A stretch of DNA of 64,000 nucleotides, from assembly GCF_030144855.1 (NCBI RefSeq), contig NC_082715.1:135098001-135162000 (forward strand), in the 5' to 3' direction. Source of the stretch: Hypanus sabinus. Its lineage: Eukaryota. The first letter of the stretch is position 1, and each line of letters starts with the position of its first letter. A program made the translations under genes and the position numbers. This document shows positions 7,499-50,646 of this stretch, one piece after another. A model generated the notes under the pieces. That model made no database searches, was not told where the DNA came from, and worked only from the letters and a program-made list of their open reading frames with translations.

Positions 7499-8446
7499 AT
7501 GGGGGAGACAGTCAGAGCAGTGGTGTGCTCCGTATGCAGTATGTGGGAGGTCAGGGTCAACACAGTTGTCCCTGATGACCACACCTGCAAAAGGTGCGTC
7601 CAGCTGCAGCTCCTATCAGACCGAGTTAGGGAGTTGGAGCAGGAGCTGGATGAACTACGGATCATTCGGGAGGCGGAGGCAGAGATAGATTGGAGTTATC
7701 AGGAGGTAGTCACACCAAAAAACCAAGAAGTAGGCAGATGGGTGACGGTCCAGAGAGGCAGGGGGAGCAGGCAGAGAGAGCAGAGCACCCCTGCGGCCAT
7801 TCCCATTAACAATAAGTATACCGTACTGGATACTGTTGATGGGGATGACCTACCAGGAATGAGTTGTAGTGGTCCTGCCTCTGGCACAGAGGTTGAACCC
7901 TCAACTAGAAAGGGGAGGAGGGAAGAGAAGAGAGCGATAGTTTTAGGGGACTCTATAGTTAGGGGGGCAGATAGGAGATTTTGTGGGGCAGATCGGGAGT
8001 CTCGGATGGAATGATGCCTCCCTGGTGCCAGGGTCCGGGACATCTCAGATCGGGTGCAGGCTATTCTTGAGAGTGAGGGCATGAACCCAGATGTAGTGGT
8101 CCATGTAGGGACCAATGATGTAGGTAAGGTGAGTGAGGGGGTCCTGCTTAGAGAGTTCAGGGAGTTAGGAGTGAAGCTGAAAGGCAGGACCTCCAGGGTT
8201 ACAATCTCGGGATTGCTACCTGTGCCACGTGCGAGTGAGGCGAAGAATAGAATGATTATGCACATTAATACGAGGCTGAGAGCATGGTGCAGGAAGGAAG
8301 GGTTCAGGTTTTTGGATAATTGGTCTTTGTTCCAGGGACATTGGGATCTGTTTCGAAGGGATGGTCTACATCTGAACCGGAGGGGTACTAACATTCTTGC
8401 AGGAGTATTTGCCAGTGCTGCTCGGGGGGGGGGGGGTTTAAACTAG
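7499..8446 (+). pseudogene. CR1 ORF1 (Zn finger, leucine zipper, SGNH esterase) with in-frame TGA at 8012-8014
   Basis: CSVC...CKRC, LxxxVxELExEL, VLGDSIVRG, VVHVGTND, DGLHLN. ORFs 7499-8014 and 8054-8446 are in the same frame. Confidence 0.9.
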
Positions 8447-8448
8447 AT

Positions 8449-11410: not shown

Positions 11411-13479
11411 GGGGACAAGGCAGGGACTGGGTATTGATAGTGAATGATCAGCCATGATCTCAGAATGGCGGTGCAGACTCGAGGGGCCGAATGGTCTACT
11501 TCTGCACCTATTTTCTATTGTCTAATACCCCTACCCACTGAATCAAATATTTCCACAATCAGTGCCACATACATATCATTCACATCCACAACTCTATATC
11601 TTACCCCATTCCTTATAAAACTAGCAACACCACTCTTTATTCTATCACACCTAATTACAATATAATCCTGCAAAGAAAAACTTAAATGTGGCAACAAACA
11701 GGTTTCTTGAATACATACAAGATCATATAGATTTGATAAATCAGAAACAAACTTTTTTAACTCTTGTCCATTAGAAATCAGGCTTCTCGCATTCCTTTGC
11801 AATATTCTTATGTGCATTATGTATATTCACAAGGAGACTGAAGTACAGATACCCCACCCATTAGAGCTTTATTTGCAGCTTCCCACATAACACCTGTCAC
11901 ACCCAGATACTTTTCAGCAGCTTTCACCATGGTTTTAATTTTCTCAGTATGACTTGATGTTTGAGCAGTACAATTCACCACATCCATTATGAACATCACA
12001 AACTTCATTTTATCAAAAAAAGTATCTTTAGTAAGAGAACTATGATGCAGTCATATAGCCTCCAACTTCACATTCTGTTCTCTGACTGGTAATACTTTAT
12101 CAACGTTTGGTTTAACTCTTTGCAAGGCCTCTGCACAAGACACACCTAACTGTACCTAAACCTACTGAACTTCAGCTGCCTCCTTAAGCACTTCACATCC
12201 TCCATAAGCTGCACCATGTTCTCTTCCACAATTACAATTCAACTTTATGCCTTCACAATCTTCATACTTCTGTTCCACACCACACTTAACTACATCTTAG
12301 TTTCCCATGACATACTGCTGCAACATGCACAGACCTCTGATATTTGTAAAATCTAAGTGAAGGTGGAATATAAGCTCATACATTACAAGTAACATATACC
12401 CCAAACTTTTATCATGGAACTTCACCTCAAAAATACAGCAATAGAGATAAACCATCCATCCTTTCCGCATTTCTGACAACTTGCAATCTCTTTACACCCT
12501 TAACCTTTCCTCCCAATAAATGAGATTTAACCTCTTGTGTCGAAATCTCCACCACAACACCCATTATGACATCCCCAATACCTCTGTTTTCATTGGGTAA
12601 CATAGATACTATCCTTTCTCCAAGTAAAGTTTTCAAAAGTAATGCCTTCTCACACTGTTTCTTACCTTACAAATGATTAACACTTTACCCCCTCTTAAAG
12701 TACGAACATAATCTATATTCCACGATGGCCAATTCTAACTCTGTAGATTACTTAATGGGATTGATAGAAGGCAGTTCCGTATCGATCTTAAACAATACCT
12801 TGAAGGATTCTTTTCTTCCCCCACCCCCCATATCCTGCCCCTCCTCTCCATCACTTGAAATCATTCCAACGTTATACTTCTTTTCCCGTTTTCCATATCT
12901 AGATTCAACTTTATTCCAACCTCCTCCTGCCAACCTGCACTCACCCGAACCCTCCATTTGCGGATCCTTTTCCAGACTCTTCCCCCCCCCCCATCTGAAC
13001 CTACAATACTTTCCAACATCCCCACACCATTCACAGTCAGCACCACCAACCACCACTCCTCCGAGTTAAAAAATCCACGGGATTTCTCAAAAGAGCCCAA
13101 CGAGCCGATACAGGCAATAAACTAATGGTCAGGTGTTCCTTAAGCACTCAATTCTGAGCACAAAACATGATTATCAATTAACGGGAACATCCTAAGCCCT
13201 TAAAGAGGCTGCGCCAGCTATCAATACTCTGGAGAGTTAGAGTATTGAATTCTCGGAAGCTGGCATGATTAGGAGTGTCTCGTAGCAATGGCATTATTGA
13301 AGCCATGATAGAAATATGGTGAGGGAGGGACAGAACTAGAAACTCACAGTTTCAAGGTATAGATGAAACATATGTGACAGAGTTAGAGATGAGAGAAGAG
13401 AGGCAGTTATGTTTTGGATCAGGGTGAACTCAGTTTATAAATAGGATATTCCTGAAGGATGGTCTGCTGAGACTATAGG

Positions 13480-17849: not shown

Positions 17850-18331
17850 TTTTATAAATCTTACAGGGTTAGAAATGGCGAAGAATTCGAGCACCTCAGG
17901 TTTGCTGTCTCTGCATATTTTAAAGAGTGACCAGATATTTCCTCTGTGACACCAATATATTTATTGTGATCCTTGGAGATGAAGAATTTTCTCATTCCAG
18001 CTGAGAATGTGCTTTGTGACTGAGATGAAGATTTCTGTTGTGACTCAGTGAAATCCACTGGAACGGATGTGCTGAGAACACTCGGTCTTCAACTTCTTTA
18101 ATTGTACAAGGGAGTCACTACGTCATACATCTGACTTAGTGAATTGCTAGAGAGTTGACAGTAGGGAGATATCATTCTCATTCTGTTACGTGGAAGGGAT
18201 TCACTCAGTTATCTGACCAACTGTCTCACTGTTCATTTCACCTTAGAGAAAGGCTGTTCACCTCAGAATTTGGGAAGGAATCCATTCAGTCATCTGACCT
18301 ACTGACACACTAATCAGTTCATACTGGGAAG
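17850..18331 (+). other. splice acceptor and 5' UTR of ZNF-1, containing decayed zinc fingers
   Basis: TTTATAAATCTTACAG|G (exon starts 17867) is conserved at 30310-30326. Finger remnants at 18170-18331 have lost a Cys codon. Confidence 0.65.
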
Positions 18332-19348
18332 ATGCTGTTTACTTGCTCAGACTGTGGGAAGGGATTTCCACGGTCATGTCAACTGAAGCTACATCAACGA
18401 GATCACACTGATAAGAAACAGTTCACCTGCTCAGACTGTGGGAAGGGATTTGATTCATCATCTCAGCTGCAGAGACATCGGTCAGTTCACACTGGGAAGA
18501 AACCATTCACCTGCACGGACTGTGGAAAAGGATTCACTCTCTCATCCAACTTATCTAGACATCTGAAAACTCACACTGAGGAAAATCTGTTCAGCTGCTC
18601 AGACTGTGGAAAACGATTCACTCGGTCATCTGACCTTCTCAAACACCAGCCAGTTCACACTGGGAAGTGGTCGTACACCTGCTCAAACTGTGGGAAAGGA
18701 TTCAGTGAGTTATCTGACCTTCGCAGACACCAGTCACTTCACACTGGGATGTGGCCATTTACCTGCTCAAATTGTGGGAAAGGATTCAGTCGGTTATCTG
18801 ATCTGAAAGGACATACGCGAGTTCACACTGGGGAGAGGCCATTCACCTGCTCAGACTGTGGGAAGCAATTCATTTGGTCATCTCACTTGTACAGACACCA
18901 GCGACTTCACTCTGGAGAGAGGCCATTCACCTGTTCCGTGTGTGGGAAAGGGTTTGCTCGATCATCCCACCTACAAAGACATGAGTCAACTCACAGTGTG
19001 AAGAAACCGTTCACCTGCTCAGACTGTGGAAAGGGATTTTGTCAGTCAACAGACCTACTGATACACCAGTCAGTTCACAGGGGGGAGTATTTGTTCACCT
19101 GCTCAGATTGTGGGAAAGGATTCACTCTGTTATACAACCTACAGGTACACCAGCGAACTCACACTGGGGAGAAACCGTTCATCTGCTCAGAGTGTGGGAA
19201 GCGATTTGCTCAGATATCCAACCTGCAGACACACCTGCGAGTGCACACTGGTGAGAGGCCGTTCTCCTGCTCTGAATGTGGGAAGCGATTCAGTCGGACA
19301 TCCGAACTTACGAAACACTACCGAGTTCACAGTGAGGACATAATTTAA
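18332..19348 (+). CDS. tandem C2H2 zinc-finger protein ZNF-1, 12 fingers, no effector domain
   Basis: 338 aa = 12 x CxxC-x12-HxxxH with TGEKP-like linkers; uninterrupted; AATAAA at 19561-19566. Confidence 0.93.
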
Positions 19349-23289: not shown

Positions 23290-26200
23290 GGAGCTGGATG
23301 AACTACGGATCATTCGGGAGGCAGAGGCAGAGATAGATAGGAGTTATCAGGAGGTAGTCACACCAAAAATCCAAGAAGTAGACAGATGGGAGAGGCAGAG
23401 AGAGCAGAGCACCCCTGCGGCCATTCCCATTAACAATAAGTATACCGTACTGGATACTGTTGATGAGGATGACCTACCAGGAATGAGTTGTAGTGGTCCT
23501 GCCTCTGGCACAGAGGTTGAACCCTCAACTAGAAAGGGGAGGAGTGAAGAGAAGAGAGCGATAGTTTTAGGGGATTCTATAGTCAAGGGGGCAGATAGGA
23601 GATTTTGTGGGGCAGATCGGGAGTCTCGGATGGAATGATGCCTCCCTGGTACCTGGGTCCGGGACATCTCAGATCGGGTGCAGCCTATTCTTGAGAACGA
23701 GGGCATGAACCCAGATGTAGTGGTCCATGTAGAGACCAACGATGTAGGTAAGGTGAGTGAGGGGGTCCTGCTTAGAGAGTTCAGGGAGTTAGGAGTGAAG
23801 CTGAAAGGCAGGACCTCCAGGGTTACAATCTCGGGATTGCTACCTGTGCCACGTGCGAGTGAGGCGAAGAATAGAATGATTATGCACATTAATACGAGGC
23901 TGAGAGCATGGTGCAGGAAGGAAGGGTTCAGGTTTTTGGATAATTGGTCTTTGTTCCAGGGACATTGGGATCTGTTTCGAAGGGATGGTCTACATCTGAA
24001 CCGGAGGGGTACTAACATTCTTGCAGGAGTATTTGCCAGTGCTGCTCGGGGGGGGGGGGGGGGTTTAAACTAGATGTGCAGGGGGCAGGGATCCAGATCC
24101 AGAGGGTTGGTCAGAAGGTGCATGGGGTTAAATGTGTACAAGGTTTGGGTGATCTTGAGAAGGTCATCAAAATTCAGGGTGCAATTTGCCCGATGGAAGT
24201 TCAAGGAGCTGGGTTAGGTACAGTAGACAGTGTTTTAAGCAAAGAGAGGAGGAATGGGCTAAGAATTCTATACTTGAATGCGTGTAGTGTCAGAAATAAG
24301 ACAGATGAGCTTGAAGCTCAGATGAAAATGGGGAGCTACGATATTGTTGGGATAACGGAGACATGGCTGCAAGGGGATCAGGCCTGGGAATTGAGTGTAC
24401 CAGGGTATACGTGCTATCGTAGAGACAGAAATATGGGAAGAGGGGGTGGGGTGGCCCTGTTGGTGAGGAATGAGATTCAGTCCTTAGCAAGAGGTGACTT
24501 GGGAACAGGGGAAGTAGAGTCTGTGTGGATTGAGCTGAGGAACAGTAAGGGTAAAAAGACCCTAATGGGTGTTGTGTACAGGCCCCCAAACAGTAGTGTG
24601 GATATTGGGTACAAGTTGATTAGGCACATTGGCATGTGCTAAAGGTAATGCAGTCGTTTTGGGAGATTTCAACATGGAGGTGAACTGGGAGAATCAGGTA
24701 GGTGCTGGGCCCCAGGATAGGGAGTTTGTGGAGTGTCTAAGGGATGTATTTTTGGAACAGCTTGTGCTTGAGCCAACCAGGAACGAGGCTATTTTGGACT
24801 TGGTGATGTGTAATGAACAGGAATTGACAAGTGATCTTGAAGTAAAGGAGCCATTAGGAAGTAGTGATCATAACATGATAAGTTTTTATCTACAATTTGA
24901 GAGGGATAAGGGCAGATCAGAGGTGTCAGTGTTGCAATTAAATAAAGGAGACTATGGAGCCATGAGGGAAGAGCTGGCAAAAGTTAAATGGGCGGATGCC
25001 CTGGCAGGAAAATCAGTGGATCAGCAGTGGCAGATGTTCTTGGGGATAATACAAAAGATGCAAAAGCAGTTCATTCCAATGAGAAGGAAGGATTCAAAGA
25101 GGGGGAAGGGGCCACAGTGGTTGACAAAGGAAGTCAGAGATTGTATAGCATTAAAGAAAAAGAAGTATGACAAGGCTAAGATGAGTGGGAATACAGATGA
25201 TTGGGAAAGTTTTAAGGAACAGCAGATCTTAACTAAAAAAGCAATACGGAGAGAAAAAAATCAGGTATGAGCTCAGTCTAGCCAGGAATATAAAAGGGGA
25301 TAGCAAAAGCTTTTTTAGCTATGTGAAGAGAAAGAAGATAGTTAAGAACAATGTTGGCCCCTTGAAGAATGAATTGGGAGAAATTGTTTATGGGAAACAG
25401 GGAAATGGCAACAGAATTTAATGCGTACTTTAGATCTGTCTTCACCAGGAAGGACACAAGCAATCTCCCAGATGTATGGATGGGCCAGGGTCATAAGATA
25501 TCAGAGGAATTGAGACAGATTGACATTAGGAAAGAAACTGTGACGAGTAGACTGGTAGGACTGAAGGCTAATAAATCCCCAGGTCCAGATGGTCTGCATC
25601 TGAGGGTTCTAAAAGAGATGGCTCAGGAAATTGCGGATGCATTGGTAATCATTTTCCAATGTTCCTTAGATTCAGGATCAGTTCCTGAAGATTGGAGATT
25701 GGCTAATGTTATCCCACTTTTCAAGAAGGGAGGGAAGGAGAAAACAGAGAACTATCCTAGCCTAACGTCAGTCGTGGGGAAGATGCTTGAGTCCATTATT
25801 AAGGACAAAATAGTGGCATATCTTGATGGCAGTAATAGGATTAGGCCGAGCCAGCATGGATTTACCAAGGGCAAATCATGCTTGACTAATCTGTTGCAGT
25901 TTTTTGAGGGTGTAACAGGGATGTTAGACGAGGGTAAGCCAGTGGATGTTGTGTACCTAGATTTTCAGAAGGCATTCGATAAGGTGCCACATAGGAGATT
26001 GGTGAGTAAAATCAGAGCTCATGGCATTGGGGGCAGGGTTTCAACATGGGTAGAAAACTGGTTGGCAGATAGAAAGCAAAGGGCAGCAGTGAATGGATGT
26101 TTCTCGGACTGGCTGGAGGTGACTAGTGGGGTACCCCAGGGCTCTGTATTGGGACCACAGCTCTTTACGATTTATGTCAATGATTTAGATGAGGGCATTG

Positions 26201-27151
26201 AAAACTATATCAGCAAGTTTGCTGACGATACTAAACTGGGTGGCAGTGTGACATGCGAAGAGGGCGTTAGGAGAATACAGGGAGACTTGGATAGGCTGGG
26301 TGAGTGGGCAAATACTTGGCAGATGTCATTCAAAGTGAATAAATGTGAAGTTATCCACTTTGGAAGCTGGAACAAGAGGGCAGAGTATTATCTGAACGGT
26401 GTAGAGTTAGGTAAGGGAGAGATGCAAAGAGACCGAGGAGTCATAGTTCATCAGTCAATGAAGGTGAATGAGCAAGTGCAACAGGCAGTGAAGAGGGCAA
26501 ATGGAATGTTGGCCTTTATTACAAGGGGAATTGAGTTCAAGAGCAAGGATGTCCTTTTGCATTTGTATGGGGCCCTGGTGAGACCACACCTAGAATATTG
26601 TGTACAGTTTTGGTCTCCAGGTTTGAGGAAGGACATTCTGGCAATTGAGGAAGTGCAGCGTAGATTCACTAGGTTGATTCCTGGGATGGCAGGGCTGTCT
26701 TACGCAGAGAGATTGGAGAGATTGGGCTTGTACACACTGGAATTGAGGAGATTGAGAGGGGATCTGATTGAAACGTTTAAGATAATTAAAGGATTTGATA
26801 GGATTGAGGCAGGAAATATGTTCCAGATGTTGGGAGAGTCCAGTACCAGAGGGCATGGATTGAGAATAAGAGGTCAGTTATTTAAAACAGAGTTGAGGAA
26901 GAACTTCTTCTCCCAGGGAGTTGTGGAGGTGTGGAATGCACTGCCTCGGAAGATGGTGGAGGCCAATTCTCTGGATGCTTTCAAGAAGGAGCTAGATAGA
27001 TATCTGATGGATAGATAGGGGAATCAAGGGATATGGGGACAAGGCAGGGACTGGGTATTGATAGTGAATGATCAGCCATGATCTCAGAATGGCGGTGCAG
27101 ACTCGAGGGGCCAAATGGTCTCCTTCTGCTCCTATTGTCTTTTGTCTTTTT
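23290..27151 (+). mobile_element. 5'-truncated young CR1 LINE, copy 2, in ZNF-2 intron 1
   Basis: Nearly identical to 7642-11524, with ORF2 frameshifted. Flanks CTACCG / GAATTC rejoin to match the empty paralogous site GATACCAAATTCC at ~16006-16018. Confidence 0.95.
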
Positions 27152-29200: not shown

Positions 29201-30811
29201 AGGACCTATTATGTCCTGGTGTGTATGATGACTATGTTCTTGTTCTTAACCGACGTTTTGATGACAACCCCCCCTCCCCTGTTGTCCATTCTTCCTGATT
29301 GGTTAGTCCTTTCCAATCAGCTTTCTGCTGTCCCACTTTATTTACAATTGAATTTCAGTTCTTACTTAAGAGTGAGACCCTCATCTTTGTTAAAATTCTT
29401 CTTTTCTAGTTTGATTTCAATAGCTGGCTTAGCTAGGCAGTCCCAAAAGCGATTGGCGTGACGCAGTAGTTTTGTGCCCTCAAAGTTAATCCTATGGCCG
29501 TTGCCATCTTCGTCCACTTTTCCTGTACTCTGTGCAATTGATCTTTAAACACCCTCCACATGTCTGATGTGGACTTGCCAGAATAATGGTGTTCCCAATC
29601 AAATCTTAGTTCCTGCCCAATGCCCTCATAGTTTGTCCTACTGCAATTTAAAACTCCGACAAGGACCATACCTATCCTTATCTATAGCTATCCTGAAATA
29701 TAAGGAGCTGTCGCCTCTGTTCCCGAACCGTTCATCCACTGAAAGGTCAGTCACCTGGCCAGGCTCATTATCCAACACTAGGTCCTGTTATGACCCTCCT
29801 CTTGTTGATTTAGCTTTAGTTCTTGAGAATATCTTTTTTGCTCTGCCTTCTCTTAGTCTGGACCTTTTTACTTCTGAGAACGTGTTTTACCCCACTCTCT
29901 CTGGGTATTTCAAAAATTTCAATATTCATTGGCATTGCTGAGTTCACCACTATCAATTACTTGAGGGGGAGGGGTTCAGAATAACTAGAAAGTGTCCAGA
30001 TCAGCCATGTAATATCATGTATTCTTTGTAGTCCTGTGGGACTTGACCAGAACTTGAAATAATACTAATGCAGGCAGACTGAGCCAAGTCACAGGTTGAA
30101 GTTGGGCAGATATGGCCCATTCTGATACGGACAGAAAAACAGTCAGAGAATTTGATGGTCAGTCCAGATGACTGATCTCCGCCCAGTTAGAAGAGGAGGA
30201 GTGTTCCTTCAATGTGGGTTGAATTTCGCAGTTACAGTGTGATGTCAGAGGTCACCGTAAGGACTAAAATTATCACATCTAAAATGCTGTCCTTCACCAA
30301 CTGATGTCTTTTATAAATCTTACAGGGTTAGAAATGGTGAAGTTGTGAACGGGAATCTCAAACTCGAGCACCTCAGGTTTGCTGCGTCTGTGCAGATTTT
30401 AAGGAGTGACCAGATATTTCCTCTGTACCACCAATATATTTATTGCGATCGTTGGAGATGAAGAACTATTACATTCCAGCTGGGAATGTGCTTTGTGACT
30501 GAGATGAAGATTTTTGTTGTGACTCAGTGAAATCCACTAGAACTGACGTGCTGAGAACACTAGGTCTTCAACTGCATTGATTGTACAAGGGAGTCACTAC
30601 GTCAATCATCTGACTTAATGAATTGCTAGAGAATTGACAGTAGGGAGATATCATTCTCGTTCTGTCACGTGGAAGGGATTCACTCAGTTATCTGACCAAC
30701 TGTTCTCACTGTTCAGTTCACCTTGGAGAGAGGCTGTTCACCTCAGAATGTGGGAAGGAATCCATTAAGTCATCTGACCTACTGACACACCAATCAGTTC
30801 ACACTGGGAAA

Positions 30812-32158
30812 ATGCCGTTTACTTGCTCAGACTGTGGAAAGGGATTCTCTTTCTCATCCAACTTACAAAGACATCAGCGAGTTCACACTGGGGAGAGGCC
30901 ATTCACCTGCTCAGACTGTGGGAAGCGATTCACTAGACAATCTCACCTGCAGTCACATCAGTCAGTTCACACCGGGGAGAAACCATTCACCTGTTCAGAA
31001 TGTGGGAAGGGATTCACTCAGTCAAATGAGCTTCTCAGACACCAGTCAGTTCACACTGGGGAGTGGTTGTTCACTTGCTCAGATTGCGGGAAAGGATTCA
31101 ATTCGTTATCTGCTCTTCACAGACACCAGTCAGTTCACGCTGGGAAGGGGTTGTTCACCTGCTCAGATTGTGGGAAAGGATTCAATTCGTTATCTGCCCT
31201 TCACAGACACCAGTCAGTTCACACTGGGAAGGGATTGTTCACTTGCTCAGATTGTGGGAAAGGATTCTCTCGGTTATCTGAACTGAAAATACATCAGCGA
31301 GTTCACACTGGGGAGAGGCCATTCAACTGCTCAGACTGTGGGAAGCGATTCGCTAGGTCATCTCTCCTGTACAGACATCAGCGAATTCACACTGGGGAGA
31401 GGCCATTCACCTGCTCCGTGTGTGGGAAAGGGTTTGCTCGCTCATCCCACCTAAAGAGACATGAATCAACTCACAGTGTGAAGAAACCATTCACCTGCTC
31501 AGACTGTGGAAAGGGATTTTCCCAATCATCAGACCTACTGACACACCAGTCAGTTCACACGGGAGAGTGGTTGTTCACCTGCTCAGATTGTGGGAAAGGA
31601 TTCATCTCGTCATCTCAACTGAAAACACATCAGCGAGTTCACACTGGGGAGAAGCCGTTCACCTGCTCAGACTGTGGGAAGGGATTCGCTCAGTTATCCA
31701 CCCTACAGGCACACCGGCGACTTCACTCTGGGGAGAAACCATTCACCTGCTCAGACTGTGGTAAGCAATTCACTCAGATAACCAGGCTGCAGACACACCT
31801 GCGAGTTCACACTGGTGAGAGGCCGTTCTCCTGCTCTGAATGTGGAAAAGGATTCAGTCGGTTTTCTGAACTGAAAATACATCAGCGAGTTCACACTGGG
31901 GAGAGGCCATTCACCTGCTCAGACTGTGGGAAGCGATTCACTAGTTCATCTCTCCTGTACAGACACCAGCGAGTTCACACTGGGGAGAGACCATTCACCT
32001 GCTCCGTGTGTGGGAAAGGGTTTGCTCGAACATCCCACCTACAGAGACATGAGTCAACTCACAGTGTGAAGAAACCATTCACCTGCTCAGACTGTGGAAA
32101 GGGATTTTCCGAATCATCAGACCTACTGACACACCAGTCAGTTCACACGGGAGAGTAG
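30812..32158 (+). CDS. tandem C2H2 zinc-finger protein ZNF-2, 16 fingers, no effector domain
   Basis: 448 aa with 16 intact fingers; acceptor at 30325; ends at TAG 32156-32158 where sister linkers have TGG (TGEW). Confidence 0.92.
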   Translation: MPFTCSDCGKGFSFSSNLQRHQRVHTGERPFTCSDCGKRFTRQSHLQSHQSVHTGEKPFTCSECGKGFTQSNELLRHQSVHTGEWLFTCSDCGKGFNSLSALHRHQSVHAGKGLFTCSDCGKGFNSLSALHRHQSVHTGKGLFTCSDCGKGFSRLSELKIHQRVHTGERPFNCSDCGKRFARSSLLYRHQRIHTGERPFTCSVCGKGFARSSHLKRHESTHSVKKPFTCSDCGKGFSQSSDLLTHQSVHTGEWLFTCSDCGKGFISSSQLKTHQRVHTGEKPFTCSDCGKGFAQLSTLQAHRRLHSGEKPFTCSDCGKQFTQITRLQTHLRVHTGERPFSCSECGKGFSRFSELKIHQRVHTGERPFTCSDCGKRFTSSSLLYRHQRVHTGERPFTCSVCGKGFARTSHLQRHESTHSVKKPFTCSDCGKGFSESSDLLTHQSVHTGE

Positions 32159-32437
32159 TTGTTCACCTGCTCAGACTGTGGGAAGGGATTCGCTGAGTTA
32201 TCCACCTTCCAGGCACACCAGCGACTTCACTCTGGGGAGAAACCATTCACCTGCTCAGACTGTGGTAAGCAATTCACTGAGATAACCAGGCTGCAGACAC
32301 ACCTGCAAGTTCACACTGGTGAAAGGCTGTTCTGCTCTGAATGTGGGAAGCTATTCAGTCGGACATCCGAACTTACGAAACACTACCGAGTTCACAGAGA
32401 GGACACAATTTTAATATGCCTCATGCTGGATATTTAA
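32159..32437 (+). pseudogene. three further in-frame fingers (17-19) cut off by the TAG
   Basis: Same frame. The last finger [12 protein letters not shown] equals the last finger of ZNF-1. Shows L>F at the conserved Leu and a one-codon deletion. Confidence 0.85.
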
Positions 32438-33790
32438 CCATCAAATTTGCTGAAGTCAGAGACGAATTCAAAAGAGACTGTTGGTGTTGAACTCCAGTAA
32501 TTTTTGCTGCTGCTTATCACATCCAGTTCTACATCCTGGCCTCTGGAACTGAGAGGAGTTTCTTCTGCTGATGTTCACCTTTAATCCTTTAATGGGAGTG
32601 GAAATTAATTTTCTGGATACATTATTAATAAATCATTTGTATTTTAAACTTTGCCTCAGGTACTTGCTGGATTTACAACTCACCCCATGTACAGTAGACA
32701 GGCAGCTCAGTCCAGCTAGACCCTTCCAGTGTTTCTGTTCCATGATAATCCTTTTAAATCCATCCTGCTGTTCACCTCTCACTCGCTCTTTGGTGATGGG
32801 TTCCAGACAGTCTCCACCATGGCTGAAGAAGTTTCCCATGAATTTCCTGCATGACTATCTGCAGACCGAAGAAGAAGACAAACTGACTGCAGTTATGTTT
32901 CTGTCTCAGATCTCTTGCCTGAGGAAGAATATCCTTGTTGGCCAGAAGGGACTACAGTCTACAAATTATTGGATTTGAATGAATCAAGGACAGTGGAAGT
33001 AGACAAAAAGAACAACCGTCTACAAATCAGTGGATTCAGATGACTCAGGACAGAAGTAGCAGACAATCCAAATGTCTCTGTTTTCCATCATTTTGTGAAC
33101 TCTGAACTGATACTTGCTCGGGGATAATCTAATCAGAGCAATTGAATGTGGACATAAGGAGGTTCAAGTGATGACCTAGTGAATCTGAGATCATTCTCAG
33201 ACAAGTAGCTATTTATTAAGTAAAGTTCTAGTCCTACTAAAGAAGCAATCTGTAATCATGTTAAATTGAGTGTTTGGGTCAACTCGTTTAACTGGTTTGG
33301 ACCAGTCAGAGTTGAAAGGCACAAACACACAAAGATGGGAGGGGCATTAACCATGGAACAACATTGGTTGTAGCCCTAGACTAGAGCCAGTAAGAAGGTG
33401 ACCAAAGTAGGTCAGGTGACTTTGAGCCAATGGGATGGAAATCCATTCATTCAACTGATGAAGGAAACTATAAGAATCTGGAGCTCCAAATGCAAAATGG
33501 TGATAACTCTCCAGCAACCAGAGACCAACTATCATGGATGACAAGGGCGCCACAGACATGTGAGATTGGGACCACAAGGAACACCTGTCCAGCATAGACT
33601 CCTTTACTGGGTAATACCTTTTCTCTTAATTGACTGTTCATGGAGGGTCAGGGAATTCTAGTGGATATGCATACAGTTAGCTAGATTATGAACCACGTGT
33701 TCTTTAGTTGAGACAATAAAGGCTACTTCTTGGTAAATACAGATTCTCTCTGACTCTCTCTTCGGTATTATAAGATCTGTATAATAAAAT

Positions 33791-36621: not shown

Positions 36622-37499
36622 AAGTGGTCACAATATGAAGGGTTTGTCAGTCACCCTGGCTGCGAAGGGAAACCTACAGGGTATACCCTTTGGAAAATCG
36701 CCCAAGAGAAGCTGCCGGAATTGTTTAAACAATTACTAAAACTAGTTACAGTTGGTTATTTAATTGAGGATTTGCTACAATTACCACAGAGTGCTAAGGC
36801 AGAATGACACAGATTAGTAATAGAAAACAAATGTCAGCATAAAGCAAGTGAGATAGGTTACAACTAGAAATATTAGAAAATCGGCATAAAGCAGAAGCTG
36901 ACTAAGGTAGGTTAAATGGAGAATACAAAAGGAGGTAGAAAGCTTGAGAGAAAGGGTTACTGATTTACAGGGTCGAAGGAGTATGGGCTTGATGCTTGTG
37001 AACCAGTTTCAGAGAAAGCAGCCAAGATAGCAAAAAGTGAAGTGGAAGGATTAAGGAAACAGTGCAGTGATTTAAAGATGGCAATGCATATGATTCAGGA
37101 ATCAGCACAGGAAAGGAAGAATAACACTGGCGATCATGCAAAGTGTTTAAAGCAGATGCAAAAGCTGCAGGACCAACTTGCTGCACAGCGAGGAATAATA
37201 TGTGCTTTTGGATATGAAAGAGGGGAGGAAGGTGAATTTGGAGATATTGATTGGTATGATTTTGCAGATGAAGCTACTAGGTGACGGTTTTGATAATTAG
37301 GGATTTTTAAATTATGCTGAGGAACTATGACTGAAACCCTGGCAATGGCAACACTTTACATCAGTGAGATTGGGAGGGAGAAGGAACAACAGATTATGGA
37401 TTTAACCAAGGAGCAGAAGAAAAATAAAGATTTCAAAAAATGAATAGAAGGAGCAGGGTCTGAAATATACAAAGACAACAAGGGAGTGTTTGTTAAAGA

Positions 37500-38489
37500 T
37501 GAAGTAGTCCTGTATCATCAATGGGGACACCAGGGGTACAAAAGCACTCTGGAAAAGATAAAGGAAGTGTGCTGGTAGCCTAAGATGAAGGATGTCAAGA
37601 AATGCTTGATCTCTGCACCATATAAACCAGACAGAAAGGTAAAGAAAGGAGCCCTACAACACACCAGACCAGTGGAAGGGTCTTGGACTAATTTGCAGAT
37701 AGATTAATGTTGGTTCATTACTCTCCACCCCAGGAGGGTACAAATACATTCTGGTAATAGTAGAGACCTTTACGGAGTGGGTGGAAGGTTTCCTAGCTAG
37801 GACAAGCACAACAAAGGCCTTTGTAAAAATCCTATTGGAAAGATATTCACTTGCTGGGGATCAAGGCAGACATTTCACAGCCCAGATAATGCAAGATGTC
37901 ATGGCAGTTTAATGGATCAAGCAGAGATTTCATACACCCTGTAGACCACAGTCTAGTGGAATTGTGAAAAGAATGAATTGAACACTAAAAAATATGTTGC
38001 AAAAATGGTGCAGAAACATGGCAGGCAGTTTTGATAATAAGGAATAGAGAGCCATCTTCAACAGTTTACACCCCTTATAAGCACGTGACTAGAACGGACG
38101 TGAAAGGATTGGAGGAGTTGTTAGGATTAGATGTCAGAATGTGAAATTGATGGGATTGTGTTGGAAAAGTGGCTACAACAATTGGTAGAGACAGTGAAAG
38201 AGGCCAATTATGTGGCAGCCCACCAATTAGAAAAATGAAGAATCAACAAAGTGAAGCCTACTGTGACTCAAAAGTCAGTCTCATAGAATTAAGTCCAGGA
38301 TGGAGAGTGATGATTCAAATACATCAACCCACCTCATTTTTAAATCCAAAGTTTGCAGGGATCTATGAAGTTATAGACAAATCAAGTCCTTCAGTGTACA
38401 AAGTACTGACTCTTCCATATAAAAGTGGGTGGTACCATGTCAACCAACTGAAATTGCTGGGGGAGAAACAGGAATGTTATCACCATTGA
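37500..38489 (+). pseudogene. retroviral integrase remnant
   Basis: GHQG, GSWTNLQID, GYKYILVIVETFTEWVEGF, DQGRHFT, RPQSSGIV, and C-terminal LNPKFAGIYEV. Confidence 0.88.
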
Positions 38490-38822
38490 CACAGAACAAT
38501 TGATGTAGCCCTGATTTGGGAGTCTTGAGGATGAAACAACTTTTCCAAGTAAATGGGGACAGATCCCAGCAAGGGGTAATTTTCAGTTTCCTCATCCTGA
38601 GAACTGGGGATTTTTGTCAAAAAAAAAGGAAAAGGAAAATGTGCTAGTGCTTATCTCTCCTATCCTGAAATCACGTTGGGTGCCTTCAGTCCAAAGACAA
38701 TTGCGAGTCCAGATTGGATGGTCTAGAAAAACAAATCGAAAATATAGACTTAAAATAACTTAAGATTTAAACTTGAAATAAGAACAGTAATTACTGTTGT
38801 GTAATACAGATTTAATTCAACA

Positions 38823-41800: not shown

Positions 41801-44800
41801 GGCACTGCTAAGGTTGGAGGGTCTGACCGAATTAAGGAGGGATTCGAATGGTTTCATATCAGATGGGTTTGTGTCCATAAAGGAGGGGTCAACCCCAGTC
41901 CCAGTGAGGATCTTTTGAGATACTGGAGCTTGTCAGCCCCTTATATTGGACAGTGTTCTGGAGTTTGGTGATGAGACAAAAACTGGTGAAGTCAATATTG
42001 TTAGAGGTATTGGGAAAGGGACTGGTTCCGTGCCTCTGCATAAGGTGATTTTGGAGTCCGGATTAGTATCAGGACATGTTAAGATAGGGATAGAACCTGA
42101 ATTACTGCTGAAGAATGGTTCTTTGTTGTTGGGCCATGACCTTGCAGGTGGTGAAGATTATCCAGCAGTGCAGCTAGCAAGCAAACCTGCCACTGATGAT
42201 CCATATGTGGATTCTGATGTTTATCCCCCCTGTGCAGTAACCCGAAGTATGACTAAAAGGTCTGCCGACACAGACAGTTCTGGGCAATTTGATTCTGATG
42301 CCCATGATAGCCAAAATCAGGGTTCAGGTTATGATGATTGACTTTTCAACACCTTTTCTACCCTCTATTTTTCAACAGGATGTAGGTAGTAAGTCTGATG
42401 AGAAAGGTTTGTCTGGGAAGGAGGTTATAGCAGAACTGAATCAATATTTTGAGACTGAAGCTTTCAAAGAAACAGCTCTCTCAGATTATGAGATTAAGAA
42501 AGTGCCAGTAGGGTATTATAGCAAGGATGGAGTATTGATCAGGAAGTGGAGGCCACCTACTGTACCTGTGAGCGAGGAATGGGTAATTGTTCTCCAAGTT
42601 GTAGTTCCTAAAGTCGATATAGGACTGAGATTTTAACTTCGGCTCATAATATGCCTTCAGGTGGACACTTCGGAGTGAAGAAGACTGTGAACAAGATTAT
42701 GAAGGCATTTTGCTGTCTAATTTAAGGGAAGATCTTGTGACCTTTTGCAGGACCTGTCGCACTTGTCAAGTTGTCGATAAACCTAACCAGGCCATCCCAG
42801 TGGTCCCACTTCAGCCTATACCCACTTTTGGAGCAACTTTTTCCACAATCCTAGTGGATTGTGTTGGCCCAGTGCCAAAGACTGCAGCTGGCCATCAGTA
42901 TTTGTGAAGCATTGTGTGCACTGCATCTAGGATCCTTGTAGTGATCCCTCTCAGGAATATTAAGGCTAAAACTGTGGTCAAAACCTTCATTAGGTTTTTT
43001 TATCTTGTTTGGTCTGCCCAGAGAGATTCAATCCGACCAGGGCAGTAATTTTACCTCAGGAATATTCCAGCAGATAGTTTATGAAGTGGGAGCTAAACAA
43101 ATTACATCGTCTGCATATCACCTGGAATCCCAGTGAAATTTAGAAAGATTTCATTCTACCCTTAAAACAATGACTAAGACATACTGTATTGAGAATAGGA
43201 AAGATTGGGATGAGGGGGTACATTTGCTCCTGTTTGCTGTAAGGGACTCAGTGCAGGTGTTGTTAGGGTTTAATCCATTTCAACTCGTGTTTGGTCACCG
43301 AGCGAGAGGACCTTTGACCTTGCTCAGTGAACACTGGTCTGATGAGAAGATGCATGTCAGCTTGTTATGTTTTGGAATTCAAGGGTAGACTCAACAGGGT
43401 ATGTAATCTTGCAAAACAGAACCTACAAAGTTGTCAAAATAAAATGAAGATCTGGTATGGTAAACGAGCTCGAGAGCAGACATACCACGTGGGTGACAAA
43501 GTGCTGGTGCTGTTTCCAATATTGACCAATCCGCTTCAAGCAAAGTTTAGTGGGCCATACCAAATAATTTCTAAAATCGATTCTTTAAATTATGTTATTA
43601 AAACAATCGACTGTAGAAAGCCCAGTCAATATGATAAAACGTTATTATGACTCAGAAATGGCATCTGTGAGTATTGTTGTGAGAACACATGAAACTGGAG
43701 AGCCTGAGGAAGGGGTGATTGACATGTTAGAAAACTTTATCAAGCCAAACATAGTCTCAGTGTGGCTCATGAATTCCACTAACCTGGAAAACATTGACAC
43801 CAAATTAAGCCATCCGCAGCCATGGCAGCAAAAACAATTGAAAAGTTGCTTCTTGAGTATGTGGATTTATTTCCCATTGTGCCCAAGCAAACCACTACTG
43901 CTGCTGTGCATGATGTTTATGTATGTCAGGCTGACCCAATTAAGCAGCACCCCTACCGGATGAATTTAGAAAAGAGTAAATTGGCTGAGCAAGAGATTGA
44001 ACACATGCTGAAAAATGGTATTGTTAGTCCGTCAACATCTGATTGGGTCTCACCTTGTGTTATTGTCCCCAAGCCTGACGGTAGTGTGAGATTTTGTACT
44101 GATTATAGGAAAGTAAATAGAGTGACAAAGACAGATGCTTATCCTATCCCTCGGGTGGATGATTGTATTGATAAGGTTGGAAAGGCTACATTCCTTATGA
44201 TGATTGACCTGTTAAAAGCGTACCGGTGTGTTCTGTTGACAGAAAGAGCCAGAGAAATCTCTGCGTTTGTAACACCTTTTGGACTGTATGAGTATAATGT
44301 TTTACCCTTTGGAATGAAAAATGCTGCTGAAACATTCCAAACAATAATTAATTCTGTGATTTGAGGTTTAGAAAATACAGATGCCTACATTGATAATTTA
44401 GATGTAGGGAGTGACACGTGGAAAGGACATATCTTGGCAGTAGAAAAACTATTTGACAGGCTCTCCAAGGCCCACCTTACTGTCAACCTAGCTAAGAGTG
44501 AATTTGGCCATGCTGCTGTTACATGTCTTGGCTATGTAGTAGGTCAAGGCCAATTGGCTCCGGTTCAGTCAAATGCTGAGGTTCCTATTCCAATAGGTAA
44601 AAAGGCTTTAAGAAGGTTTTTGGGAATGGTTGGACACTATCGTAAGTTTTGTAAAAACTGTTCTGATCTCGCTCTTCCCCTAACTAATCTACTTAAGAAG
44701 GGTGAAAAATTGGTGTGGACTGAACCTTGTTAGGAGGCGTTTGATCAATTAAATACTATTCTACAAACGTATGTTATCAACCTGTGCTCAGAGCACATGA

Positions 44801-48699: not shown

Positions 48700-50638
48700 T
48701 ACCTTGAGCATGAATACCTTGATACCTAATCACTTTAGTGTTCATGCATTTTGATTTTTTTTGATATTTTATATATATTTTTTGATGTTTTTCTCTATTA
48801 ATAAGGCTTAGTATGGGTATGTATTTTTTATTATTTTGAAATTCCAATAATTAATCTTTGTGTGTTTTTCGTAAGAGGTTTAAGTTTCTTTCTCAGTTGT
48901 TTTGTCTAGGTTGGAATGCAGCTAATCTTGATATAGATTGGAGCTAGAATAGCAGGATTTTTTGGGGGGATGACGTTATTAGTAGTAGCTGCCAGCTCTC
49001 TATTGGTCGGCTTTCTGGCTTTGGGTGGAGGGAGGGGAAAAAAGCTCTCTTTCTGGAAGTTGTGTTGGGTTCTCAGCCTAATCTGTTGCTTGGTTACCTT
49101 ATCTCAAGGTTGGTTGTCTGGTTTTCGTATACATTCTAGTGTGGTCATTATCCTAACCTTTTTTTTAAATAGTACTAAAAATGGATCAAATTATTAATTT
49201 ACTTAGTCTTAATGTGAAAAGATTAAATCACGCTGTGAAACAGAATAAGATTTTTGCCTATATTAAAAAAAACTTAAGGTCCCAATTGTGTTTTTACAAG
49301 AAACTCATGTATGTAACTGTGACAATCCACGCCTTTTCATCCCTTTCTTCGAGCTAAATCTAGAAGGGTTTCAATCTTTATAGATAATACTGTTCCTTTT
49401 GTTCAACGTAAAGTAGTGTCTGATATTAATCGGCTAATAAATTAATATTATTCGCTAATCTTTATTCCCCGAATATAGATGACCCAGGATTATTTCACTG
49501 TTTTTTTTCCACTCTTGCCAGATTTGAGTCTTTATTCATTAGTTTTCGGAGGAGACTTTGATTGCTGATTAGATCCAGTTTTAGATCGGTCATCTTCCAA
49601 ACCAGCTACCCTTAACAAATCAGCTTTATTTATTCAATCTTTCCTAGTTAAATGAGGTATTGTTGAATTTTGGCATTTTTCACATCCAGAAGATAGGGAG
49701 TACTCGTTTTCTTTTCTCATGTTCACCATACATATTCCAGGATTGATTTTTTTATTGATAGTCAAATGATTACATCAGTTCGATCCTGTGAATATGAAGA
49801 GATTGCTGTTTCAGACCATGCTCCTGTGCTTTTATCTTTAAACCTTCCTGGTCTCCCTCAAATAGATTTTGGCGTTTTACTCTAACTTTGCTATCTGGTA
49901 GGGATCTTTTAAAGTTTCTGGAGAAACAAATTATTCTTTTTTTAAAGAGAATATGCTAGAAGTGACTTCTCATCTTATTATATGGGACGATTTAAGGCCT
50001 ATATTAGAGGACAAATTATTTCTTCTACTGCAATTGTTACGAAAAAAGCTAATAAAGAGAGAATTGATTTAACTAATCTGTTGAAACAATTAGACCAAAA
50101 ATATGCTTTGGCTCAATTTTCTGCTTTATATAAAAGACATGTTGAAATTAAAACTAAATATGATCTTCTTTTAACATATCCAATTGAAAGTCAACTCCTA
50201 AAATATAAAATTCAATTCCATATTCATGGAGACAAAACAGGTAAATTATTGGCTAACCACTTAAAAACGTTTATTGCTAAATGGCAAATTAAAGAAATTT
50301 TTAAAGCTAATGGTGATAGGACAACTGACCATTTAGAAATAAATGATACCTTTAGAGAATTTTATTCTAAACTTTATAGTTCTGACTCTCCTAAAGATAA
50401 TGCTGTAATGAATATTTTTAGACCAATTAAACATCCCTGTACTTTCTGTTGATAATCGAAAGCAGTTGGATCAACCTATTTCTTATGAGGAAAATGCAGA
50501 GGCTGTATGTTCATTGCACTCCGGGAAGTCTCCGGGTCCTGATGGATTTTCTGGAGAATTTTACAAGGCTTTTTCCTCATTGCTTATACCTTATTTATGT
50601 TCTGTTTTTCGGATTTCTTTAAGTTAGGTAGACTGACA
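48700..50638 (+). mobile_element. L1-clade ORF2 5' part, truncated at a junction with ERV copy B
   Basis: SLNVKRLN, LQETH, SDHAPV, KAYIRGQII, GDKTGKLLA, KSPGPDGF. Confidence 0.88.
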
Positions 50639-50646
50639 TAAAGGTA

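What the first reader, a model, noticed from the sequence alone, without database searches (positions are those of the whole stretch)
31238..32330. Internal finger-block duplication with parallel changes at DNA-contact position -1
Seen: ZNF-2 fingers 6-9 and 11-12 are repeated as 13-16 and 17-18 (finger 10 is missing from the second block), and fingers 4 and 5 have identical helices. Four of six duplicated pairs differ at helix position -1: AGG>AGT (31355/31943, R>S) and three independent C>G changes giving Q>E (31523/32111, 31691/32195, 31775/32279). Three identical transversions at one codon position in otherwise near-identical DNA are hard to get by drift. Inference: selection for new base specificity, or conversion among fingers. 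Two of them lie beyond the present stop, so they probably predate it.
Basis: partly seen in the sequence, partly recalled or inferred. Interest (0 to 1): 0.72.

Follow-up and report, generated by a model that had tools for sequence, protein, structure and literature searches.

The report
Stingray zinc-finger block duplication, retuned
A young zinc-finger gene of the Atlantic stingray copied a run of its own DNA-reading fingers, and the copy then made the same Gln-to-Glu change at a base-contacting residue in three neighbouring fingers before a stop codon cut the gene short; this is a clear but ordinary example of how such genes evolve.

Summary
ZNF-2 (units from 30818) has 19 C2H2 fingers. Fingers 13-18 copy fingers 6-9, 11 and 12 at 94.4% identity (28 differences in 504 nt).

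New here:
- **Outgroup:** a collinear paralogue 12.5 kb upstream (ZNF-1, 18338-19345) carries C at all three sites, so the three Gln>Glu changes and the Arg>Ser change arose in the second block.
- **Position:** the three G's lie 84 nt apart, in consecutive fingers 16, 17 and 18.
- **Junction:** the first 20 nt of finger 13 come from the terminal finger type. This marks the unequal-crossover junction and explains four of the 28 differences.
- **Enrichment:** codon -1 holds 5 of the 23 remaining differences (P about 0.001).
- **Parallelism:** three identical parallel changes in one lineage have P about 0.004 at any position.
- **Constraint:** all 124 zinc ligands are intact. Scaffold dN/dS is about 0.4 and helix dN/dS 1.3-2.0.
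- **Conversion:** no donor is visible in the window.

Most likely, selection retuned the copied fingers and the TAG at 32156-32158 came later. Coincidence in a decaying gene is not excluded, and no alleles or sister-species sequences could be obtained. This mode of evolution is already well documented in mammals.

The parts
30818..32413 (+). ZNF-2 array: 19 C2H2 fingers in 84-nt register. Finger 19 lacks one codon.
   Evidence: TRF period 84, 20.3 copies. Pfam zf-C2H2 gives 16 stretches before the stop and 3 after it.
30812..32158 (+). Present open reading frame (448 aa). It runs from an ATG in a linker to the TAG after finger 16.
   Evidence: The same ORF was found as a called gene only in assembly GCA_030144855.1.
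31070..31237 (+). Fingers 4 and 5: a single-finger tandem duplicate with identical helices.
   Evidence: 94% identical; dN 0.016, dS 0.247.
31238..31573 (+). Block A, fingers 6-9.
31574..31657 (+). Finger 10, which has no counterpart in block B or in ZNF-1.
   Evidence: Its best match is finger 6 at 87%, lower than the 94% between blocks. It is therefore older than the block duplication and was most likely deleted from block B.
31658..31825 (+). Block A, fingers 11-12.
31826..32329 (+). Block B, fingers 13-18: the diverged copy.
   Evidence: 16 of the 28 differences are derived here.
31826..31845 (+). Duplication junction: the first 20 nt of finger 13 are of the terminal-finger (finger 19 / ZNF-1 finger 12) type.
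   Evidence: 20/20 identity to ZNF-1 finger 12 against 16/20 to finger 6. Positions 21-84 match finger 6 at 60/64.
31943..31945 (+). Finger 14, helix -1 codon AGT (Ser). It is AGG (Arg) in finger 7 and TGG (Trp) in ZNF-1.
   Evidence: The third-base T is derived in block B.
32111..32113 (+). Finger 16, helix -1 codon GAA (Glu). It is CAA in finger 9 and CAG in ZNF-1 finger 9.
32195..32197 (+). Finger 17, helix -1 codon GAG (Glu). It is CAG in finger 11 and CTG in ZNF-1 finger 10.
32279..32281 (+). Finger 18, helix -1 codon GAG (Glu). It is CAG in finger 12 and CAG in ZNF-1 finger 11.
32156..32158 (+). In-frame TAG in the linker after finger 16. The codon is TGG in finger 9 and TAT in ZNF-1.
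   Evidence: Its polarity by parsimony is ambiguous.
32330..32437 (+). Finger 19 and the original end of the frame (TAA at 32435-32437). One codon is lost between Phe and the first Cys, and a 1-nt indel replaces the ZNF-1 stop and lengthens the tail.
32627..32632 (+). AATAAA, conserved with ZNF-1, about 190 nt after the far stop.
18338..19345 (+). ZNF-1: a 12-finger collinear paralogue used as outgroup. Its fingers 6-12 correspond to ZNF-2 fingers 6-9, 11, 12 and 19, and equally to fingers 13-19.
30631..30817 (+). Decayed, frameshifted finger remnants upstream of the array, shared with ZNF-1 (18151-18337).

Best explanation
**Shown.** The window comes from the Atlantic stingray, Hypanus sabinus. 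It holds two tandem paralogous C2H2 poly-zinc-finger genes made by a segmental duplication of about 12.5 kb.

In the downstream gene, ZNF-2, an unequal crossover paired the 5' end of the terminal finger with the 5' end of finger 6. This duplicated a run of fingers in tandem.

**Inferred.**
- Seven fingers (588 bp) were duplicated, and the copy of finger 10 was later deleted.
- The upstream copy kept the ancestral helices. The downstream copy took replacements concentrated at the start of the recognition helix: Arg>Ser in finger 14 and the same Gln>Glu change at helix -1 in consecutive fingers 16, 17 and 18.
- These changes were fixed by selection on DNA-binding specificity while the whole array was still translated.
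- By the structural recognition rules, Gln at this position reads adenine, while Glu reads cytosine, 5-methylcytosine or thymine. The copied half would therefore shift the 3' base of three adjacent triplets and stop competing for the motif read by the first half.
- A later TGG>TAG mutation after finger 16 truncated the protein. The three distal fingers have since begun to decay: Pro>Leu in a linker, loss of one codon, and Leu>Phe at the core position.
For: - **Source:** both ORFs occur only in GCA_030144855.1. That assembly also carries a protein NCBI names as Hypanus sabinus.
- **Segmental duplication:** self-BLAST and flank alignments give about 90% identity.
- **Collinear outgroup and polarity:** the three G's and the Ser are derived in block B.
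- **Hybrid junction in finger 13:**
- **Enrichment at -1:** P=0.0009. Four of 13 block-B-lineage substitutions are at -1, P=0.0009, and 8 of 10 block-B non-synonymous changes are in the helix, P=0.0004.
- **Identical triple change:** P=0.004 at any position, 0.0004 in a contact codon.
- **Rare mutation class:** C<>G differences are only 8% of differences in the non-coding flanks.
- **Constraint while diverging:** scaffold dN/dS is 0.34-0.42 against helix 1.3-2.0. Replacement:silent counts are 20:2 in the helix against 25:19 in the scaffold, P=0.005.
- **Zinc ligands:** none of 124 is destroyed. Expected losses under neutrality are 7.5-8.8 for ZNF-1 vs ZNF-2, 4.0 between blocks, and 3.2-4.7 for the post-stop fingers.
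- **Asymmetry between copies:** replacement:silent counts are 10:3 in block B against 4:6 in block A.
- **Control branch:** the ZNF-1/ZNF-2 branch carries 46 changes. Its only triply hit positions lie in contact codons +3 and +6, with different outcomes.
- **Recognition rules:** Gln reads adenine; Glu reads cytosine, 5mC or thymine at the position equivalent to helix -1 (PMC12264921).
- **Precedent:** finger gain and loss, and selection at contact residues in young paralogues, are documented (PMC3126818; PMC5120217).
Against: - Helix dN/dS above 1 is a point estimate from few changes. The N:S asymmetry between the blocks is not significant (P=0.10).
- Contact positions +2, +3 and +6 show no difference between the blocks, so the four contact positions taken as a class are not enriched (5 of 28 differences against 4 expected).
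- Diversifying selection usually gives different residues, not the same one three times.
- The gene now carries a premature stop and other lesions. Post-stop fingers have dN/dS of about 0.8-0.95.
- Neither gene has a recognisable N-terminal region or a proven start, and expression is unknown.
- The pattern was picked out after the fact, so nominal P values are optimistic.
- Homogenisation among fingers could help preserve the ligands without selection.
- No allele, second haplotype or sister-species sequence could be obtained.
Confidence: 0.5

Rival explanations
1. Neutral coincidence in a dying gene. After the internal duplication the extra fingers were redundant or already untranslated. Substitutions accumulated without selection, and the three Gln>Glu changes are a chance pattern noticed after the fact.
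For: - There is a premature TAG at 32156-32158, a lost codon in finger 19, Pro>Leu in a linker and Leu>Phe at core position +4 in finger 17.
- Overall dN/dS between the blocks is 0.6, and 0.9 for fingers 17-18.
- By strict parsimony on TAT/TGG/TAG, the stop could even predate the block duplication.
- A unit position hit in three pairs regardless of the change made is not rare (P=0.13).
- Both genes are preceded by decayed fingers and lack a clear start.
Against: - Three identical changes in one lineage have P=0.004 (0.0004 in a contact codon), and C>G is the rarest class of change.
- Codon -1 is enriched at P=0.0009.
- Zinc ligands are intact in both blocks and beyond the stop, against expectations of 3-9 losses.
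- Scaffold dN/dS is about 0.4.
- The control branch has twice as many changes and shows no identical triple.
Confidence: 0.28
2. Non-independent mutation. One C>G arose once and spread to the neighbouring fingers by very short conversion patches between out-of-register repeats, or was copied from a Glu-bearing finger of a paralogue. The three changes would then count as one or two events.
For: - The three sites are exactly 84 nt apart in consecutive units.
- Fingers 17 and 18 share the 5-nt context CTGAG around the site.
- Finger 17 shares a 9-nt string through the site with ZNF-1 finger 5, which has Glu at -1.
- Spread of beneficial changes along repeat arrays has been proposed (PMC5120217).
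Against: - The flanking bases differ immediately next to the site in finger 16, so a tract could be at most about 2 nt. It could be at most about 5 nt between fingers 17 and 18.
- The longest matches elsewhere through the derived bases are 8-9 nt, which is chance level in 128 kb.
- No quasi-palindrome could template the change.
- C<>G changes gain nothing from GC-biased conversion (established knowledge).
- Donors outside the 64-kb window were not testable.
Confidence: 0.12
3. Assembly artefact. The second block is a false expansion of a repeat, or a mix of haplotypes.
For: Tandem 84-nt repeats are hard to assemble, and no reads were available here.
Against: - The blocks differ at 5.6% of sites, and the differences are consistent when polarised by the outgroup.
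- The copy has a clean hybrid junction and lacks one finger. A false duplication would be near-identical.
- ZNF-1 and ZNF-2 flanks differ by about 10%, far above the difference expected between haplotypes.
Confidence: 0.03

Closest known systems
Lineage-specific tandem C2H2 poly-zinc-finger genes, best studied as mammalian KRAB-ZNF clusters
   Same: - Tandem gene duplicates with 28-residue fingers in one exon.
- Gain and loss of whole fingers by unequal recombination.
- A conserved scaffold with variable helix positions, and replacements at DNA-contacting residues in young paralogues.
- Frequent pseudogenisation (PMC3126818; here).
   Different: - No KRAB, SCAN, BTB or SET domain was found in the ORFs tested.
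- The host is an elasmobranch.
- Many linkers are degenerate (GEWL, GKGL).
- The replacement is the same residue in three consecutive fingers rather than a scatter over -1, 2, 3 and 6.
PRDM9-type zinc-finger minisatellite arrays
   Same: Rapid evolution at base-contacting helix positions within a tandem finger array, with high dN/dS between repeats (PMC5120217; PMC3126818).
   Different: - Units here are only about 70-75% identical to one another, so there is no minisatellite-like homogeneity.
- There is no PR/SET domain.
- Change is at -1 only, not at -1, 3 and 6.
Horizontal evolution of protein repeats after duplication (Persi et al. 2016)
   Same: A freshly duplicated repeat passes through a phase of relaxed and/or positive selection and diverges quickly, while older repeats stay conserved (PMC5120217). 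Here block B has N:S of 10:3 against 4:6 in block A.
   Different: That work is statistical and proteome-wide. This is a single locus with a polarised history and an identifiable junction.
Glu at the helix -1 position in characterised fingers, such as CTCF ZF4
   Same: Glu at the position equivalent to helix -1 contacts cytosine or 5-methylcytosine on the recognition strand, and Gln or Asn reads adenine (PMC12264921). This gives a concrete prediction for the Gln>Glu change.
   Different: There is no structural or binding data for these stingray fingers, and context effects between neighbouring fingers can override the simple code.

Membership tests
C2H2 (Krueppel-type) tandem zinc-finger protein | C-x2-C-x12-H-x3-H ligand spacing in every unit, with conserved Phe and Leu core residues. 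| tested here: met
   All 19 ZNF-2 and 12 ZNF-1 fingers match the pattern. Cys, His, Phe9, Gly and Lys are invariant in 31 of 31, and Leu at +4 in 30 of 31.
C2H2 (Krueppel-type) tandem zinc-finger protein | Significant match to the Pfam zf-C2H2 and zf-H2C2_2 profiles. | tested here: met
   ZNF-2 before the stop: zf-C2H2 E=1.7e-107, 16 stretches. After the stop: 3 stretches. ZNF-1: 12 stretches.
C2H2 (Krueppel-type) tandem zinc-finger protein | TGEKP-type linkers between fingers. | tested here: inconclusive
   About two thirds of the linkers are TGE(K/R)P. The rest are GEWL, GKGL or SVKKP, and one is GE-stop-L.
KRAB-ZNF (or SCAN/BTB-ZNF) subfamily | An N-terminal KRAB, SCAN or BTB effector domain encoded upstream of the array. 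| tested here: inconclusive
   Pfam found no such domain in the array ORFs or in the flanking ORFs tested. Upstream sequence is decayed fingers and an antisense LINE fragment. Small upstream exons, or exons outside the window, were not exhaustively searched.
PRDM9-like minisatellite finger array | Near-identical DNA units (over 90%) that differ mainly at -1, 3 and 6, plus a PR/SET domain. | tested here: not met
   TRF gives 73% matches among units and pairwise unit identities are mostly 0.70-0.83. There is no SET hit.
In-array segmental duplication by unequal crossing-over | A hybrid repeat unit at the junction, with copies in register and collinear with an unduplicated relative. | tested here: met
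   Finger 13 is terminal-finger type over positions 1-20 (20/20) and finger-6 type over positions 21-84 (60/64). ZNF-1 fingers 6-12 are collinear with both copies.
Positive selection at DNA-contact residues after duplication | An excess of replacements at contact codons relative to the scaffold and to silent change. | tested here: met
   Codon -1 enrichment P=0.0009. Contact codons hold 16 of 45 amino-acid changes, P=0.0003. N:S is 16:1 at contact codons against 29:20 elsewhere, P=0.007.
Positive selection at DNA-contact residues after duplication | dN/dS significantly above 1 in a codon model, on a branch or at sites. | tested here: inconclusive
   NG86 helix dN/dS is 1.3-2.0 but rests on 10-25 differences. 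No likelihood branch-site test was possible with three sequences.
Positive selection at DNA-contact residues after duplication | Fixed differences exceed polymorphism (a McDonald-Kreitman-type test), or the changes are conserved in sister species. | not testable with these tools
   No second haplotype, population data or sister-species DNA could be reached.

The most novel reading that the evidence does not exclude
The three identical Gln>Glu changes in consecutive fingers could be a coordinated retuning of the duplicated half of the array. It would switch a 9-bp subsite from triplets ending in A to triplets ending in C, 5-methylcytosine or T. One zinc-finger protein without a KRAB domain would then read both an old and a new (mutated or methylated) version of a repeated target such as a transposon subfamily. 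That would be a stepwise arms-race footprint in an elasmobranch, caught just before the gene was lost.
Probability: 0.15. Interest if true: 0.55.

Novelty: new member of a known kind. Interest (0 to 1): 0.3.

Why it matters
Poly-zinc-finger genes are the largest and fastest-evolving class of vertebrate DNA-binding proteins. Almost all detailed histories come from mammalian KRAB-ZNF genes and PRDM9.

This locus offers a fully polarised small-scale history in a cartilaginous fish: gene duplication, an in-array block duplication with a visible junction, loss of a finger, replacements focused on one contact position, then truncation. It suggests the same birth, retuning and death cycle operates in elasmobranch zinc-finger families that lack KRAB.

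It also yields a concrete, testable prediction about specificity: an A to C/5mC/T shift at three triplets. In itself it confirms known principles rather than changing them.

Tried and rejected
- **Protein database searches for outgroups, alleles or sister-species copies.** Three searches were run, with the 448-aa ORF, ZNF-1 fingers 6-12, and the 92-aa piece after the stop. The first two were swamped by generic vertebrate zinc-finger proteins (best 55-59% identity). The third returned only 5 weak hits. No close relative was found.\n- **Exact look-ups.** The ORFs are not in the clustered protein collection. They occur on one 168-Mb record whose DNA could not be served.\n- **Conversion donors in the window.** None found.\n- **Quasi-palindrome templating of the C>G changes.** None found.\n- **CpG hypermutability.** The ancestral C's are not in CpG (read from the sequence).\n- **GC-biased conversion.** It does not act on C<>G changes (established knowledge).\n- **Finger 10 as a late insertion into block A.** Rejected, because its closest relative (finger 6, 87%) is more distant than the blocks are from each other.\n- **PRDM9-like minisatellite.** Rejected on unit identity.\n- **Representative-protein search and structure prediction.** Not used. 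The first would again be swamped by generic fingers, and the second would not bear on the question.
Full report
**What is there**

The window contains no N. It is vertebrate DNA carrying two C2H2 zinc-finger arrays on the + strand.
- ZNF-1 has 12 fingers in 84-nt units starting at 18338.
- ZNF-2 has 19 fingers in units starting at 30818.
- Pfam confirms zf-C2H2 in both genes and finds no other domain.
- Both ORFs occur as called genes only in assembly GCA_030144855.1. That assembly also holds a protein NCBI labels Hypanus sabinus, so the source is the Atlantic stingray, a batoid elasmobranch.

**Checking the observation**

- Fingers 6-9 and 11-12 recur as fingers 13-16 and 17-18, with 28 differences in 504 nt (94.4% identity). 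Nineteen differences lie in codons whose amino acid differs, and nine are silent.
- Fingers 4 and 5 share one helix.
- The three C>G differences are at the stated coordinates and each turns Gln into Glu at helix -1.
- For the Arg/Ser pair the changed base is 31357/31945.
- A fifth pair (fingers 8/15) also differs in that codon, but silently.
- The three G's lie at 32111, 32195 and 32279. They are exactly one unit apart, in consecutive fingers 16, 17 and 18.

**An outgroup inside the window**

Self-BLAST shows that the ZNF-1 and ZNF-2 loci are a tandem segmental duplication. Non-coding flanks are about 90% identical.

Finger by finger, ZNF-1 fingers 6-12 correspond to ZNF-2 fingers 6, 7, 8, 9, 11, 12 and 19, and equally to fingers 13-19. 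Using ZNF-1 to polarise the 28 differences gives 16 derived in block B, 11 derived in block A and one unresolved.

At the three sites ZNF-1 has C (codons CAG, CTG, CAG). Glu is therefore derived in block B in all three fingers, and the Ser of finger 14 is also derived. ZNF-1 is about equally distant from both blocks (58 and 62 differences), so it has not been homogenised with one of them.

**How the duplication arose**

The first 20 nt of finger 13 match the terminal finger type 20/20, against 16/20 for finger 6. Positions 21-84 match finger 6 at 60/64. Finger 13 is thus the hybrid unit left by an unequal crossover between the 5' ends of the terminal finger and finger 6.

Four of the eight finger 6/13 differences belong to this junction. 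Excluding positions 1-21 of finger 13 leaves 23 differences for the tests below.

Finger 10 is most similar to finger 6 (87%). That is less than the similarity between the blocks, so finger 10 is older than the block duplication and was most probably deleted from block B.

ZNF-1 finger 10 has the 5' 30 nt of ZNF-2 finger 10 and a helix like finger 11. This hints at an independent one-finger loss in ZNF-1, but it rests on only two diagnostic bases.

**Is the pattern more than chance?**

- Placing the 23 differences at random puts five or more in codon -1 with P=0.0009, or five or more in any single codon with P=0.02.
- A unit position hit in three pairs, regardless of the change made, is not unusual (P=0.13).
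- Requiring the same change in the same lineage gives P=0.004 at any position, 0.0004 in a contact codon and 0.00008 at -1. The substitution spectrum was taken from the flanks.
- C<>G differences are the rarest class in the flanks, 21 of 261.
- Gln>Glu has a single one-step path, so the identity of the nucleotide changes is the same fact as the identity of the amino-acid changes.
- As a control, the ZNF-1/ZNF-2 branch carries 46 changes. Its only triply hit positions are in contact codons +3 and +6, each with different outcomes.

**Was the array under selection while this happened?**

- NG86 estimates give scaffold dN/dS of 0.34-0.42 and helix dN/dS of 1.3-2.0 in all comparisons.
- Over the three-sequence tree, replacement:silent counts are 20:2 in the helix and 25:19 in the scaffold (P=0.005). 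They are 16:1 at contact codons against 29:20 elsewhere (P=0.007).
- Contact codons hold 16 of 45 amino-acid changes (P=0.0003).
- All 124 zinc ligands are intact:

| Comparison | Ligand losses expected under neutrality | P of none |
|---|---|---|
| ZNF-1 vs ZNF-2 | 7.5-8.8 | ≤0.0006 |
| Block A vs block B | 4.0 | 0.018 |
| Post-stop fingers vs ZNF-1 | 3.2-4.7 | 0.01-0.04 |

- The array, including the part now beyond the stop, was therefore a constrained coding sequence for most of its history.
- Block B carries 10 replacement and 3 silent changes, with 8 of the 10 in the helix (P=0.0004). Block A carries 4 and 6. The difference between the blocks is not significant (P=0.10).

**Conversion and other mutational explanations**

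The sequence around the three sites differs between fingers. A conversion tract could span at most about 2 nt for finger 16 and about 5 nt between fingers 17 and 18.

The longest exact match anywhere else in the window through each derived G is 8-9 nt, which is chance level. The only finger-derived match is a 9-mer shared by finger 17 and ZNF-1 finger 5. No inverted repeat could template the changes. The ancestral C's are not in CpG, and GC-biased conversion does not favour C<>G changes. Donors elsewhere in the genome could not be examined.

**The stop and what follows it**

The TAG at 32156-32158 corresponds to TGG in finger 9 and TAT in ZNF-1. Parsimony alone cannot say when it arose. TGG also occurs in other linkers of both genes.

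Beyond the stop lie several further changes:
- Leu>Phe at core position +4 of finger 17.
- Arg>Gln and Pro>Leu in finger 18.
- Loss of one codon in finger 19.
- A 1-nt indel that replaces the ZNF-1 stop.

dN/dS for this part is 0.8-0.95. An AATAAA conserved with ZNF-1 follows the far stop. Together with the intact ligands, this fits a recent truncation of a formerly 19-finger protein.

**Gene status**

Both genes are preceded by the same decayed, frameshifted finger remnants. ZNF-1 has a TAA where ZNF-2 has CAA. Further upstream lies an antisense LINE fragment. No N-terminal domain or proven start was found, and expression is unknown.

**Likely mechanism**

The shown steps are the segmental duplication, the in-array block duplication with its junction, the polarity of the changes, their concentration at -1, and the past constraint on the scaffold.

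The inferred steps are as follows. Selection fixed the replacements. They change specificity, because structural work shows Gln or Asn reading adenine and Glu reading cytosine, 5-methylcytosine or thymine at the position equivalent to helix -1 (PMC12264921). The truncation came afterwards.

I put 0.5 on this account, 0.28 on coincidence in a decaying gene, 0.12 on non-independent mutation and 0.03 on an assembly artefact.

**Relation to what is known**

Gain and loss of fingers within arrays is described as a common route of divergence. Contact residues in recently duplicated paralogues show positive selection (PMC3126818). Freshly duplicated protein repeats diverge quickly under relaxed and positive selection (PMC5120217).

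The locus is a new example of that known kind, in an elasmobranch and apparently without KRAB. Its unusual feature is the same replacement made three times in a row. It is not PRDM9-like, because the units are only about 73% alike.

**Limits**

Only three related sequences exist in the window. No population, haplotype or sister-species data could be reached. The pattern was selected after the fact, and the counts are small.

Noticed in passing
window 7642-11523 and 23290-27147: Two LINE copies with endonuclease (Exo_endo_phos) and reverse-transcriptase ORFs, including a 606-aa RT ORF at 9559-11379. They are 96.5% identical. This is clearly higher than the roughly 90% of the surrounding ZNF-1/ZNF-2 segmental duplication in which they seem to sit at matching positions. 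They are either younger independent insertions or have been homogenised.
   Followed up: partly
window 18151-18337 and 30631-30817: Both zinc-finger genes are preceded by the same decayed, frameshifted finger remnants, so the decay predates the gene duplication. The last remnant is in frame with the array in ZNF-2 (CAA) but interrupted by TAA in ZNF-1. Both keep an ATG in the following linker.
   Followed up: partly
window 19094-19177 (ZNF-1 finger 10): This finger has the 5' 30 nt of ZNF-2 finger 10 (30/30) and a helix like ZNF-2 finger 11. That is the pattern expected from a one-finger deletion by recombination between two ancestral fingers. It would mean finger 10 was lost twice independently, in ZNF-1 and in block B. 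It rests on two diagnostic bases only.
   Followed up: partly
ZNF-1 fingers 6-11 vs ZNF-2 (unit positions 44 and 53): On the branch separating the two genes, the only unit positions changed in three fingers are the second bases of the +3 and +6 codons, each with different outcomes. This is the classical diversifying pattern at contact residues, and it contrasts with the same-residue pattern at -1 between the blocks.
   Followed up: yes
window 32414-32437 vs 19340-19348: A 1-nt indel in ZNF-2 removes the stop used by ZNF-1 and lengthens the C-terminal tail by about 10 residues. An AATAAA about 190-215 nt downstream is conserved in both genes.
   Followed up: partly
window 56331-56393 (- strand): An isolated, stop-riddled C2H2 finger remnant, far from the two arrays.
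   Followed up: no
window 57747-58346: A cluster of short tandem repeats (periods 7, 14, 19, 26 and 118 nt), G+C-rich. Nature unknown.
   Followed up: no
window 36728-38820 / 50646-52752, and 49505-50641 / 62861-63993 (inverted, 96%): Further dispersed repeat pairs, one with a reverse-transcriptase ORF nearby (43822-44364). The window is rich in retrotransposon copies of several ages.
   Followed up: no
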